Assembly: GCF_002571385.2 (NCBI RefSeq)
Contig: NW_019217788.1
Location: forward strand, 1,492,087-1,556,086
Source: Stylophora pistillata
Taxonomy: Eukaryota
Length of the DNA: 64,000 nucleotides
Direction: 5' to 3'
Below the pieces are notes generated by a model. It did no database searches. It had not been told where the DNA came from and saw only the letters and a list, made by a program, of their open reading frames with translations. Both the position numbers and the translations under genes were made by a program. The first letter of the stretch is position 1; every line of letters begins with the position of its first letter. Shown one piece after another: positions 1,310 to 43,600 of this stretch.

Positions 1310-1923
1310 ATGCCAACTCTTGACGACATAGTTGAAGGCTCTGCTGATAAAAGCAAACAGCAACTGCAAGAAGCATTAGTGGAGCTACTCAGAGGGAATC
1401 CAGAGATTTTAGATTCAGTCACGAAATCTAAGTCAGAGACGCAACAGGATAAGAAGAAAGTTGTAAGTTTATTTTTAGATTTTTTACATAAAGATAAAAA
1501 AATACCAAACGCTAGCCTCAAGATAGCCTTGCACTGGAATTTTTACTAGGGTATATTCCTATTAACACTCTACACCCTAACATCAGTAGGCATATTCTCC
1601 ATACTTTTCTCCATATATTTCCTATGGTATTGACAAAGAGAGTTTGTTCAACAATCAAGAGCTTTTTGAGTTGGTGATCATTTCCTGTTTTCTCATAACC
1701 TTGATGTTTGATTTAGCTGTTATACTGTAAAGAGAAATTGGATGCTAGTCACTGTGAGGGGTGAACAGGTTACCCCACTGAACTTGCGAAGATATTGATA
1801 TGTAACTTCATATAGGTAATCGCATGGGGCTGAGTAAAATTAAGGATTAATATCACGATTGTTTTCGGAAGTTGCTGAAATTGCCCGAGTCGCGCAGCAA
1901 TGAGGGCAACTTCTGCAACTTCC

Positions 1924-1955
<32 letters not shown>

Positions 1956-40600: not shown

Positions 40601-43600
40601 TGCAATCTGTTTGTGTTTGTTAGACATGTTTGTAACTTTAAGTTACTTCCCACCTTCGATGGTGCCCTTCGGGAAAAAATTCGTACGCGCGCTAGTTTCA
40701 AGAAAACCTTAACAAACTATACATCGAAAGAAAGCTTAATAAATGCTATTTACGATAAAAATGTAAGGCGATTTTTTCATTAAGGGAATGTCAGGAGCCG
40801 GTAAGGCGTGAAACGACCGAGGGTCCTTCTATTGAATTTATCAGGTATCGGATCCCGCACCACGAGCAAGATGGCTGCACAGTCTTATTCACTAGGCATC
40901 AATCAACAAAAGTGTGTGAGACATTTCCGATATTCTGATTGGTCTTCTACATATCCCCATCTAGAATTAGAGTAGCGTAAAATGTAACACTACGTAAATG
41001 AACACTCGGTAAATGAACACTACGTAAAAAAGTATTTCAAATATCAAAATTTCCTGACATTTTTCTAGTTTGTCATTATCCCTGGAATGTTTTGGCGAAA
41101 TTTCACGGAAATCGGTCAAATCTACATACCCTAGAAAGTCGCTTAAAGTGGATGTGTTCCTCTCAAAATCAAATGCGAGGTTTTGGCTCCTAAAGGTTTT
41201 TAAACAACTAGCGCCACACCAAGAGATTCTCTCGCCTCCTGAAACCGCGAACCAATGGGAAGACGGGACCTACTGGTGTCAATGACAATGATGGATCGAG
41301 TTTTTTCCGGGAAAAGTATCGCATAGCACTCATGTTTTTTATCTCGCTCTGTTGAACGTTGATTCATGGGAAAAATTGGCGAAGGAAAAACCTGCGGCAA
41401 AAAAGGTAAAGCTGGAGAAACTGCTGAAAAGCAAAACAGCGAAACGACAGACAGCTTAAGTAATACCCTTATCGCTGAAATGACTTCCCTCGGTTAGGTT
41501 TATTCATGATTTCATACGATTCGAGGCGATTGCCTATGTTTTGTAGCAAGGCCGGTACTTGCTTATTAAAGGAATCTTCGTTTTTAACCTCATGTACGAC
41601 AAATGTAGATTTGATGACGACTTCTTTGTTCGCAGTTTGGGTGCCAGAGTGGAGAGGAGTTCCAAGACTGTGTTTTTTTTTCCTGACAAAATGGTGCCAT
41701 TTCTCTCTTCTTTGAGCCTGTTTTTTTCTTTTTCTTTGCCCTGGGTCTCCTCTCTGATTTTGATTTCTGTTTTTTATCGATGGGAAAAGACTTAACGCTA
41801 GCAAAGAACTTCTTCGTGTGAATTTGATTAACTGCGCGATGTAAACAAAAATTAGAAATAACACGAAATTGCTGCAAATATCCCCTAAGGGATTTGCCCA
41901 TTTACGTGATTTTGACACCTTCCTGATTTATTAACTTTTATTTGAAAATGCGTTTTCCTAACTAAGTCGGGCGCTTTCTGAGATTTTAAAATTTTTATTT
42001 TTGTAAACGTTAGTTAAAATGTCTAACTTTAATCTAGTCCAATAAAAGAAAAAACGACTTTTTTCGGCCTCTGAAGGTTGGAAGTAACCTTAATGTGGTG
42101 AGCACTATTCGTTGTTCTTCCAAATAAGGAAATTTATCCTAAGTGTGACCTCTCGTTTCAGTGGAAGCTAAAGAAAATGAAAAACATTCGCAAACATCTT
42201 CAGCCAACGTCCCAATATGTGAGGACTTGGAAAAAAAAGCCCTCGAGATCGAGCTTCATAAGCAGGAAGAACAGGAACAGAACCAGAATGACGAAAAGAA
42301 AAACTGGATGAAATGGCTTAAAAATCCTGACTTTTATAAGGTATGAACGTTTTACTTAACCCTGTATGTAGTTATGGTTTTGAAAATCAACGCAAAGATA
42401 GTCTCCATGAATGGAAATCGGGGCATTTTCAGCGGTTAACAAACCCGAAGACAAGTTAAGACGAAGCGTTGGGTAATGAAAACGCTTTTGACAGAAAATG
42501 GACTCGGAGCTTGTTTTCTGATTGAAGAAGTTGTTGGAAGGAACATCACTCAGGGCGTTTTCCTTGTTGATGTTCCCAAGGAGAGTTTGTGCTGTTAGGT
42601 TATCGACACTTGGAGCTGCATATGTGACGTGAGATTCATGGCCGGGGTGAAGGCCATTCGTTTTCTGAGACTAAGACCCTTGTTTGTTTTAGTCTCGCCG
42701 ACACCAAGGTTTACTTATCAAGTAAATATATCTTATTAACCAAGCGCGAGGGCCGTACTGGGAGAATATCGGCCCGAGGTCTTGACAGTACGGACCGAGC
42801 GCAGCGAGGTCCGTACAAAAAAGACCGAGGGCCGATATTCTTCCCGTACGGTCCCGAGCAAGCTTGGTTAATAAGAGATTTATGATACGACTGAAGTTCA
42901 AAGGGACACAAGAGCGGTGTCATTCGGGACAGTGCCCGGTCCAATACTGAGAGAATATTGGACCGGCAATACAGCATTTTGATTGGTTGATTTTAGTTTT
43001 TGGCCCTCTGACTGCCCGAGTCGTGTAATAAGTTTTCTTATCCTTTGCAGATTGTTATAATATACATGACGACACAGAATGTGGTTAATTTGAATCAGTC
43101 GTACTTTCCCATGTATCTAACGGAAACTCTTCACTTCCGGAAGGTAAAATAATCATGAGATCTGAAACTGTGACTGGAAAAAAAGGAAAAAGTCAGTCAG
43201 CACTTGTCAGGCTGTTCGAAATTATTGTAATACTAGCTTATTAAGCGTTGTGTACGGTGAGACTAAAGCAATCTGTTGGATTTTCCAACCATTTACCTTA
43301 ATCCTTTAATTCCTAGAAGTGATTAACATGTAACTTCTCCTTATAATATCAATACATGATCCAGCATAAAGGTAGTGAGAATACTCAAACTAATCAGGTA
43401 GAAGAGAAGGGATGTGGGAGGGGGTCAATAATCGACCGACACTCCCGCAGTACTCTTCGCGGCTTGCTTCACGCTACAGAACGCGGTATAAGATCCAGTG
43501 ATATAGGTCATTCAACCCGAGTGCAAGACTTGAACTTTAGTGGCAAAGTTAACTTTTTTGTCTTTTATTCTCAACAGGAAGCCATTGCATATTTTCCATT

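What the first reader, a model, noticed from the sequence alone, without database searches (positions are those of the whole stretch)
1813..43031. Small elements of different sequence share one design: an internal reverse complement of their own circle junction (DIRS-ICR-like)
Seen: five elements from four sequence families (1813-2153 +, 2156-3026 -, 14643-15133 +, 26689-27267 -, 42728-43031 +) have layout A...a'b'...B. The internal a'b' block matches the reverse complement of right end joined to left end. Example: right CATGTATATTATTAA + left TAGGTAATCACATG versus internal CATGTGATTATCTATTAATAATATACATG. Second example: right AGTCGTGTAATAA + left ATATCTTATTAACCAAGC versus internal GCTTGGTTAATAAGAGATTTATGATACGACT. 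All have a long foldback with a GC-rich core (GAGCCCGTAGGGCGAG, CGAGCGCAGCGAG or similar), most have a CCAATCA box in the second arm, and none has mutual TIRs, an extended TSD or an ORF. Known: DIRS retrotransposons use an internal complementary region to splint their ends into a circle that a tyrosine recombinase integrates without a true TSD; Cryptons also use tyrosine recombinases. Inference: these are miniature self-splinting, circle-forming non-autonomous elements whose structure is conserved while sequence is not. They may already sit in repeat libraries under Crypton or unknown labels; I cannot check that here.
Basis: partly seen in the sequence, partly recalled or inferred. Interest (0 to 1): 0.8.

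Follow-up and report, generated by a model that had tools for sequence, protein, structure and literature searches.

The report
Coral rolling-circle transposons with self-pairing ends
The five small repeats are real, high-copy, non-coding passengers of Helitron-type (Helitron2/Helentron) rolling-circle transposons of a stony coral, and their "internal copy of the circle junction" is that group's known end layout in an extreme form that would hold the two ends together on a folded single strand.

Summary
All five elements, plus at least five more unrelated families I found, share one layout. Read with the hairpin first ("R orientation"), it is: a 2-3 nt tail; a 100-190 nt hairpin; after 0-3 nt a 13-30 nt block (b'); then an interior with a CCAAT box; then the exact complement of b' (B) at the far end. 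Folding puts the 3'-terminal base next to the hairpin foot in 9 of 11 elements.

Each unit moves as a whole. The families have hundreds to thousands of copies, near-identical copies at different loci, no target-site duplication, head-to-tail tandems, and insertion after a T/A-rich motif that mimics the element's own right end.

The DIRS / tyrosine-recombinase reading is not supported. The layout is the asymmetric terminal inverted repeat plus stem-loop of Helitron2/Helentron elements. A related cnidarian-type contig carries a full Rep-helicase element with the same geometry. Its 27-nt repeat abuts a 145-nt hairpin that is homologous to the hairpin at window 42728.

In Stylophora itself no enzyme-coding partner is firmly tied to these elements. 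The self-splint function is inferred, not shown.

Three earlier notes of this scan (s1-779107, s1-775555, s1-777798) already described these hairpin-capped elements on other DNA of this genome. New here are the end geometry, the family-specific target rule and the cross-species link to an enzyme.

The parts
1810..2132 (+). Element 1 (family 1) as defined by other genome copies: (G)TATAGGTAATCGCATG left end, hairpin, b' block, CCAAT box, right end ...GCAATTACAA
   Evidence: 39-40 other copies match window 1811-2132 and then diverge. One search gives the left-end motif.
1816..1974 (+). Element 1 long hairpin (71-nt arms, 82% complementary)
1975..2000 (+). Element 1 internal b' block, directly after the hairpin
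   Evidence: It pairs with 2132-2153 (19/22) and more weakly with 2110-2132.
2133..2154 (+). Orphan 22-nt segment between the right ends of elements 1 and 2. It complements b' of element 1 but is absent from other family-1 copies.
   Evidence: Unresolved.
2155..3027 (-). Element 2 (family 2, about 253 nt of its own sequence), left end CATATATCTCATT, decayed hairpin with a TGAG-CCC-ATA-GGG-TGAG apex, b' TTATTATCCAAC, right end GTTGGATAATAAA
   Evidence: other copies join query 203 directly to query 824.
2258..2877 (-). Nested unrelated 620-bp MITE with about 42-nt terminal inverted repeats, inserted in element 2
   Evidence: separate family hits, with termini matching each other in inverted orientation.
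14640..15132 (+). Element 3 (family 3), complete young copy: GTA tail, hairpin, b', interior, B
   Evidence: A 99.6% identical copy lies at another locus (L002).
14642..14815 (+). Element 3 hairpin with apex GAGCCC-GTA-GGGCGAG
14816..14836 (+). Element 3 b' block (TAATAATATACATGAAAAAA), 0 nt after the hairpin foot
14998..15075 (+). Element 3 internal tandem repeat (about 21-nt unit, about 4 copies)
   Evidence: Read directly
15095..15099 (+). Element 3 CCAAT box (AACCAATCAGA), 38 nt from the right end
15112..15132 (+). Element 3 right end B, the exact complement of b'
26690..27270 (-). Element 4 (older, longer family-3 variant) preceded by host TTTT. Hairpin about 27099-27263, b' from about 27090, B at 26690-26710.
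42726..43031 (+). Element 5 (family 5): AT tail, hairpin 42728-42879 with apex CGAGC-GCA-GCGAG, b' 42880-42893, inverted CCAAT box at 42981, B 43018-43031

Best explanation
These are non-autonomous derivatives of Helitron-like elements of group 2 (HLE2: Helitron2/Helentron, the group that includes DINE-1 and HINE elements), mobilised in trans by a Rep-helicase (HUH) transposase. Here the stem-loop is very long and the repeat partner abuts its foot.

Inferred mechanism: one strand is nicked at the junction between a T/A-rich flank and the left end, then peeled off. The hairpin folds. When the far end is unwound, B pairs with b'. The 3' end then sits beside the 5' end on a continuous internal splint, with only a 2-5 nt unpaired linker at the nick. 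This would help the transposase join the ends into a circle, or recognise the joined form, which is one long palindrome with the junction inside its stem. The circle then integrates without a target-site duplication, next to a short motif that resembles the element's own right end.

Shown: the architecture, unit mobility, absence of target-site duplication, target motifs, tandems, and an enzyme-coding relative with the same ends. Inferred: which strand folds, and that the splint is functional.
For: Architecture in at least 10 unrelated families, with a 0-3 nt gap between hairpin and b'.

Unit mobility: at least 40 full-length copies of family 3, and a 99.6% identical copy at a different locus. 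The left-end 21-mer has 507 hits against 0 control. The a'b' junction 21-mer has 307 against 4, mostly at the same 166-nt spacing.

No target-site duplication. Three paralogous empty sites show insertion after host TTT/TTA.

The left flank mimics the element's own right end in a family-specific way: AATAA^ for the family ending in TAATAA, and ATT(T/A)^ for the family ending in ATTA.

Head-to-tail tandems exist (C730; L063).

Autonomous relative L063: a 27-nt TIR (24/27 matching) lies 3 nt from a 145-nt hairpin. Together they enclose OTU/DUF6570, Helitron_like_N+PIF1 and a 361-aa ORF. A CCAAT box lies about 50 nt from the TIR end, and the hairpin is 76% identical to the family-5 hairpin.

The Stylophora genome encodes HLE2-type RepHel carrying the DUF6570 marker.

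Literature: HLE2 has short TIRs, a stem-loop after one TIR, and T-rich insertion sites (PMC11417382, PMC4067079). Fusarium Helitron2 has GAA-looped terminal hairpins, a TNAT^ target and joined ends (PMC5148889). Helraiser makes and cleaves precise end-to-end junctions on one strand only (PMC5876387).
Against: No autonomous copy with these termini was secured in Stylophora itself. The candidate on contig C174 rests on a weak 12-nt match (about p 0.004) and on boundaries that may be assembly artefacts.

L063 is a single example from an unnamed assembly. Three other RepHel loci (L064-L066) showed no such ends within 10 kb.

The insertion sites are not the plain T|T described for HLE2.

In L063 the purine-mismatch / GNA-loop code lies on the strand antisense to RepHel, whereas in Helraiser the plus (top) strand of the transposon is the active one.

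No circle or junction reads were obtained. Pairing in single-stranded DNA cannot be told apart from two copies of one duplex protein-binding site.
Confidence: 0.82

Rival explanations
1. Same family (HLE2 passengers), but the repeat and hairpin work as duplex or cruciform protein-binding sites. The two ends carry the same site in inverted orientation, and the single-strand splint never forms or does not matter.
For: Helraiser needs double-stranded donors and circles (PMC5876387). Any terminal inverted repeat shows cross-family 'covariation' if one protein site must be present at both ends. The joined form is a long perfect palindrome that could extrude as a cruciform.
Against: The 0-3 nt abutment of b' to the hairpin foot in 10 families is not required by two independent binding sites. 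The interruptions of the hairpins (CGAG opposite CGAG, GNA triloops) are stabilising on one strand only (earlier notes s1-779107 and s1-777798).
Confidence: 0.3
2. Small elements mobilised by a tyrosine recombinase through a circle.
For: The internal complement of both ends formally resembles a DIRS ICR. There is no target-site duplication. The target resembles the element's own junction half, as in site-specific recombination. Phage_integrase-type domains exist in the genome.
Against: No inverted or split direct terminal repeats. No RT/YR partner linked. A homologous hairpin and the same layout bound a RepHel element. RNA reads cover both strands equally, with no defined ends. Several of the integrase hits are on tiny contigs.
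Confidence: 0.04
3. Passengers of a different single-strand HUH system (Y1 Rep, Replitron-like or IS200/IS605-like) rather than RepHel.
For: The family-specific short target 5' of the left end resembles the right end, as in IS200/IS605 and IS91 logic. Replitrons have short direct repeats at their ends (PMC10288648).
Against: Replitrons are reported from plants, algae and protists (PMC10288648). The only coding element found with this layout is RepHel (L063).
Confidence: 0.06
4. Two ordinary MITEs that happen to abut: a foldback plus an inverted-repeat element.
For: Each half is on its own an inverted repeat. TA and TTAA lie near the inner junction of family 3.
Against: All 40 best copies carry both halves with the same spacing. 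No target-site duplication flanks either half. The pairing recurs in 10 families and in an 11.9-kb coding element.
Confidence: 0.01

Closest known systems
HLE2 non-autonomous elements: HINE / DINE-1 (Helentron-associated interspersed elements), PMC4067079, PMC7492417
   Same: Non-coding. One terminal and one subterminal inverted repeat. A stem-loop outside the subterminal repeat. Central tandem repeats (family 3). T-rich insertion sites, no target-site duplication, very high copy number, tandem arrays.
   Different: The hairpin is 100-190 nt instead of a 5-10 bp palindrome. The repeat is 13-30 nt and directly abuts the hairpin foot, whereas mite HINEs have it 38-60 bp from the end with spacers. 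A conserved CCAAT box lies 38-60 nt from the TIR end. Target motifs are family-specific rather than a plain TT.
Fusarium Helitron2 elements FoHeli1-5 and 'HLE2-reverse' / proto-Helentron (PMC5148889, PMC11417382)
   Same: Asymmetric terminal inverted repeats. A terminal hairpin with a GAA (GNA) triloop. A short T/A-rich target 5' of the hairpin end (TNAT^). ORF orientation relative to the ends can be either way. Joined-end products have been detected.
   Different: The fungal hairpins are about 15 nt. No CCAAT box is reported, and no abutment of the TIR to the hairpin.
Helraiser / canonical Helitron (HLE1), PMC4778049, PMC5876387
   Same: RepHel enzyme, one-strand transfer, precise end-to-end junction made and re-cut by the transposase, a hairpin near one end, no target-site duplication.
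   Different: 5'-TC / CTRR-3' ends, a 16-20 nt hairpin, A|T target, no TIRs. These defining features are not met here.
DIRS1 internal complementary region
   Same: An internal block complementary to both termini that could splint them into a circle.
   Different: DIRS elements are retroelements with RT and a tyrosine recombinase and with ITRs or split direct repeats. None of these features is present or linked here.
IS200/IS605 and IS91 (bacterial HUH insertion sequences)
   Same: No target-site duplication. Insertion 3' of a short specific motif. Hairpins read on one strand.
   Different: Different enzymes (Y1 TnpA or IS91 Rep), prokaryotic, subterminal hairpins at both ends. Here this is a resemblance in logic only.

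Membership tests
HLE2 (Helitron2/Helentron) non-autonomous element | Short inverted repeat between one terminus and a subterminal site at the other end (asymmetric TIR) | tested here: met
   13-30 nt, 86-100% complementary, in 10 families
HLE2 (Helitron2/Helentron) non-autonomous element | Stem-loop between the subterminal repeat and that terminus | tested here: met
   100-190 nt hairpins, 2-7 nt from the end. They are far longer than those described.
HLE2 (Helitron2/Helentron) non-autonomous element | No target-site duplication | tested here: met
   Flank profiles and three paralogous empty sites
HLE2 (Helitron2/Helentron) non-autonomous element | Insertion between T and T / in T-rich DNA | tested here: inconclusive
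   Family 3 inserts after ATT(T/A) and family 5 after AATAA. The base on the other side is variable. This is closer to the Helitron2 'TTTT^' and FoHeli 'TNAT^' targets than to a plain T|T.
HLE2 (Helitron2/Helentron) non-autonomous element | Autonomous partner encoding RepHel with the same termini | tested here: inconclusive
   Met in a related assembly: L063 has the same geometry, a hairpin homologous to family 5, and a DUF6570 marker. Not secured in Stylophora, where there is only a weak candidate on C174.
HLE2 (Helitron2/Helentron) non-autonomous element | HLE2-type RepHel present in the same genome | tested here: met
   42 Helitron_like_N loci. C174 has a 2013-aa ORF with OTU + DUF6570 + Rep + PIF1.
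DIRS retrotransposon derivative | Inverted terminal repeats or split direct repeats | tested here: not met
   The two termini are unrelated to each other in either orientation
DIRS retrotransposon derivative | Internal region complementary to both termini | tested here: met
   The a'b' block. A formal resemblance only.
DIRS retrotransposon derivative | Partner encoding RT/RNase H and tyrosine recombinase with the same ends | tested here: inconclusive
   Integrase-type domains exist in the genome, but none could be examined for these ends. The only coding element with the layout is RepHel.
Crypton | Tyrosine recombinase gene; no terminal structure; short microhomology at the junction | tested here: not met
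   The elements have elaborate terminal structure, and no YR is linked to them
Canonical Helitron (HLE1) | 5'-TC, CTRR-3', A|T target | tested here: not met
   The ends are GTATAGG... / ...ATTATTA and ATATATC... / ...GTAATAA
Classical TIR MITE | Terminal inverted repeats at both extreme ends flanked by a target-site duplication | tested here: not met
   By contrast, the 620-bp insert nested in element 2 has about 42-nt terminal inverted repeats; its TSD was not examined.

The most novel reading that the evidence does not exclude
The abutting repeat-plus-hairpin is a functional self-splint. The folded transferred strand forms a nicked duplex in which the 3'-OH is held against the 5' end, with the cleavage site in a 2-5 nt unpaired linker. 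The short sequence 5' of that site doubles as the family-specific target code. This would give the first structural rationale for the asymmetric TIRs of all Helitron2/Helentron elements. It would also show that these eukaryotic transposons choose their targets by mimicry of their own junction, as IS91 and IS200/IS605 do.
Probability: 0.3. Interest if true: 0.65.

Novelty: new variant of a known kind. Interest (0 to 1): 0.45.

Why it matters
The transposition chemistry of Helitron2/Helentron elements has never been reconstituted, and the role of their asymmetric inverted repeats is unknown. These coral families are young and abundant, and they exaggerate the terminal structure. This makes three things testable with oligonucleotides and one recombinant RepHel: the geometry (ends meeting on an internal splint), the strand that folds, and a family-specific target code. 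On the practical side, the elements make up a noticeable share of coral non-coding DNA. They carry CCAAT boxes into new sites and break short-read assemblies at their ends.

Tried and rejected
(1) Finding the Stylophora autonomous partner. The RepHel locus on C174 was fetched as 20 kb. Its repeat boundaries (L061:3434-3445, L062:9102-9105) and a 12-nt match to the block next to a nearby hairpin are only suggestive: 7 comparable matches occur in 20 kb. No hairpin lies at the ORF-distal end.

(2) Reads. Multi-copy noise dominated. Family edges were confirmed at 14637 and 15132/3. No clean empty allele and no back-joined reads were listed. RNA covers both strands with no defined starts or ends, so there is no evidence for or against circles.

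(3) Other cnidarian RepHel loci. L064 has an 80-nt hairpin with the same strand code but no partner repeat. L065 and L066 have none within 10 kb. P0030 and P0025 gave no DNA.

(4) Resemblance of the right flank to the left end was tested and is not significant (4.35 against 4.18 matches).

(5) Rfam shows no known RNA family on any of the elements, so a hammerhead / retrozyme idea was dropped.

(6) The two-MITE idea and a piggyBac TTAA reading of the inner junction were rejected by family-level unit structure.

(7) Within-family compensatory changes were not pursued. Decaying dead copies are not expected to covary, so the cross-family comparison was used instead.
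Full report
WHAT IS THERE. The window is contig C5:1492087-1556086 of the stony coral Stylophora pistillata. I read the five elements, and both quoted examples are exact.

I call the strand on which the hairpin comes first the R orientation. On it every element reads as follows: a short tail; a long hairpin (A with a'); after 0-3 nt a block b'; an interior; and at the extreme right end B, the complement of b'.

For 14640-15132 the predicted single-strand DNA fold is -110 kcal/mol, against -44 +/- 3.5 for shuffles (z = -19). Two nucleotides are unpaired, helix 1 spans nt 3-176, and helix 2 opens at nt 177 and closes on the last nucleotide.

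A scan of everything I held found the same geometry in further unrelated families: L062:8705-9102, two in L026, and one each in L008 and L029. In 9 of 11 elements folded, helix 2 starts 0-3 nt (8 nt in one old copy) after the hairpin and ends on the 3'-terminal base.

The hairpin apices share a design and not a sequence: CGAG opposite CGAG around a short G+C stem with a GNA triloop, on the R strand only. Three earlier notes of this scan (s1-779107, s1-775555, s1-777798) had already described this strand-specific code on other DNA of this genome and read it as Helitron2/Helentron-like. I reached the same reading before I saw them.

IT IS ONE MOBILE UNIT. Family 3 has at least 40 full-length copies at 88-100% identity out of 998 candidates. 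These include a 99.6% identical copy with different flanks, so the family is young. Family 5 has 2421 candidates and family 1 has 508.

The family-3 left-end 21-mer occurs 507 times (control 0). The 21-mer spanning a'|b' occurs 307 times (control 4). In the listed subset the two mostly lie 166 nt apart on the same strand.

CORRECTED ENDS.
- Flank profiles, and the loose ends of contigs from three other read sets, put the left edge of family 3 at 14637-14640 and the right edge at 15132. Family 5 starts two bases earlier than stated.
- The family of element 1 ends at 2132 in all 39 other copies, followed by unrelated flanks. I could not explain it.
- Element 2 is 2155-3027 (minus strand). It carries a nested, unrelated 620-bp MITE with about 42-nt TIRs at 2258-2877.

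INSERTION BEHAVIOUR. There is no target-site duplication. Three paralogous empty sites show insertion after host T-runs:
- CTTATTT^ACAAGG;
- GCAATTTT^GGTCTG, inside the stem of another long hairpin repeat;
- GTTTTAGTA^TATAC, inside the a'|b' block of another family.

The 4-5 host bases before the left end are strongly constrained and family-specific, and they copy the element's own right end. Family 3 ends in ...ATTA and sits after A-T-T-(T/A), with T in 25/25 and 23/25 flanks at the two central positions. Family 5 ends in ...TAATAA and sits after AATAA. Matches to the family's own right end are 4.2-4.4 of 8, against 2.3-2.6 at a control offset. A similar resemblance of the right flank to the left end is not significant.

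Head-to-tail tandems occur, with right end joined to left end: C730 has three units with the junction GTAATAA|ATATATC.

WHAT IT IS. The published structure of Helitron-like elements of group 2 is this: short (12-16 nt) inverted repeats, one terminal and one subterminal; a stem-loop beyond the subterminal one; T-rich targets; no target-site duplication; often central tandem repeats in the non-autonomous HINE/DINE-1 forms; and ORFs in either orientation (PMC4067079, PMC11417382). Fusarium Helitron2 elements have terminal hairpins with GAA loops, a TNAT^ target and joined-end products (PMC5148889). Read on the opposite strand, the coral elements are exactly this layout.

LINK TO AN ENZYME. The genome has 42 Helitron_like_N loci. 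On contig C174 a 2013-aa open frame carries OTU, DUF6570 (the HLE2 marker according to PMC11417382), Rep and a PIF1 helicase.

Its closest relatives are cnidarian proteins. One of them (72% identical, ENA assembly ERZ25067879, locus L063) lies in an element with the full architecture:
- A 27-nt terminal repeat at 5396-5422 pairs (24/27) with 17118-17144.
- That site lies 3 nt before a 145-nt hairpin at 17148-17292.
- The pair encloses OTU/DUF6570, Rep+PIF1 and a 361-aa ORF.
- A CCAAT box sits about 50 nt from the TIR end.
- The hairpin aligns with the family-5 hairpin of the window at about 76% and shares the ATATAT-(C/G)TTATT end.

Inside L063 the coding unit is followed head-to-tail by a short unit with a 91% identical copy of the same 5' end. 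At that natural junction the subterminal repeat, the hairpin, a 5-nt linker and the next unit's terminal repeat form one long palindrome. In a circle or a tandem, therefore, the end-to-end junction lies inside the stem of an extended hairpin.

Caveats:
- This is one locus from an unnamed organism.
- Three other RepHel loci showed no such ends within 10 kb.
- In Stylophora the only candidate (L061:3434 to L062:9102) rests on weak evidence.
- In L063 the purine-mismatch / GNA code lies on the strand antisense to RepHel.

CCAAT BOX. A box of the form RRCCAATCAGA lies 38-60 nt from the right end, in one orientation, in 8 of the 11 small elements folded (7 of 9 distinct families) and in L063. Family 5 has it inverted. 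Background is 0.26 per 120 nt on both strands. I infer that it is the promoter-proximal NF-Y site of the coding elements, retained in the deletion derivatives. This is not tested.

MECHANISM (inferred). By analogy with Helraiser, whose transposase makes and re-cuts precise end-to-end junctions on one strand only (PMC5876387), I propose four steps:
1. A nick between the right-end-like host motif and the left end.
2. Peeling of that strand and folding of the hairpin.
3. Capture of the far end by b'-B pairing, so that both termini meet with a 2-5 nt unpaired linker at the nick.
4. Joining into a circle, followed by integration next to a motif that mimics the right end.

I cannot say whether pairing happens in single-stranded DNA or whether the repeats are duplex or cruciform protein sites.

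WHAT FAILED. Read laying gave no clean empty allele, no back-joints in the listed rows, and RNA on both strands without defined ends. Rfam gave nothing on the elements. Integrase-type domains exist in the genome, but nothing links them to these ends.

VERDICT. The tyrosine-recombinase interpretation is replaced by Helitron2/Helentron passengers. The "self-splint" idea survives as a reasonable, untested rationale for that group's asymmetric repeats. This is a new variant of a known kind, already met by this scan elsewhere in the genome.

Noticed in passing
window 16031-16663 (and on to about 16873): A 314-nt, 99% perfect inverted repeat with a 5-nt spacer that contains tRNA-like genes (Rfam tRNA at 16157-16229 minus, 16465-16537 plus, 16716-16788 plus). 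Read depth there is 10^6-10^7 word-depth, so it is an extremely abundant tRNA-derived repeat. Already flagged as s1-787367.
   Followed up: partly
window 2258-2877: A 620-bp repeat with about 42-nt terminal inverted repeats (family with dozens of copies), nested inside the hairpin element at 2155-3027.
   Followed up: partly
window 2133-2154: A 22-nt segment between two right ends that belongs to neither family consensus, yet complements the b' block of element 1 at 19 of 22 positions. It may be the relic of an alternative or older right end (end bypass?).
   Followed up: partly
window 13904-14017 and 5245-5336; L005:693-789: Uninterrupted paralogues (77-82% identical) of the repeat into which the 14640-15132 copy inserted. 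A further interspersed family of unknown type.
   Followed up: no
L005/L006/L015/L024/L028 flanks of family-3 copies: Another very long palindromic repeat (arms of 130 nt or more, apex CGAGCGCGCAGCGCGAG) repeatedly carries a family-3 insertion at the same TTT^GG site in its left arm. Either a hotspot or a composite that was itself amplified.
   Followed up: partly
G000:C39:581897-582373: Three family-1-type left-end motifs at an exact 230-bp spacing on one strand: a tandem array of a shortened unit.
   Followed up: no
L062:6809-8629 (G000 contig C174): An intact 607-aa DUF6589 ORF lies between the HLE2 RepHel gene and a hairpin element. Diverged paralogues (about 71%) lie on C14, C25 and C21. 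It may be a captured or unrelated transposon-derived gene.
   Followed up: no
L064 (NCBI GCA_949826985.1, CATKWK010002009.1): A cnidarian-type HLE2 RepHel that carries a Herpes_teg_N-type cysteine protease domain in place of OTU. An 80-nt hairpin with the same CGAG strand code lies 1.7 kb downstream.
   Followed up: partly
G000 small contigs C1491, C3385, C3014, C3087 and others: The best Phage_integrase hits lie on contigs of a few kb, probably bacterial sequences within the assembly.
   Followed up: no
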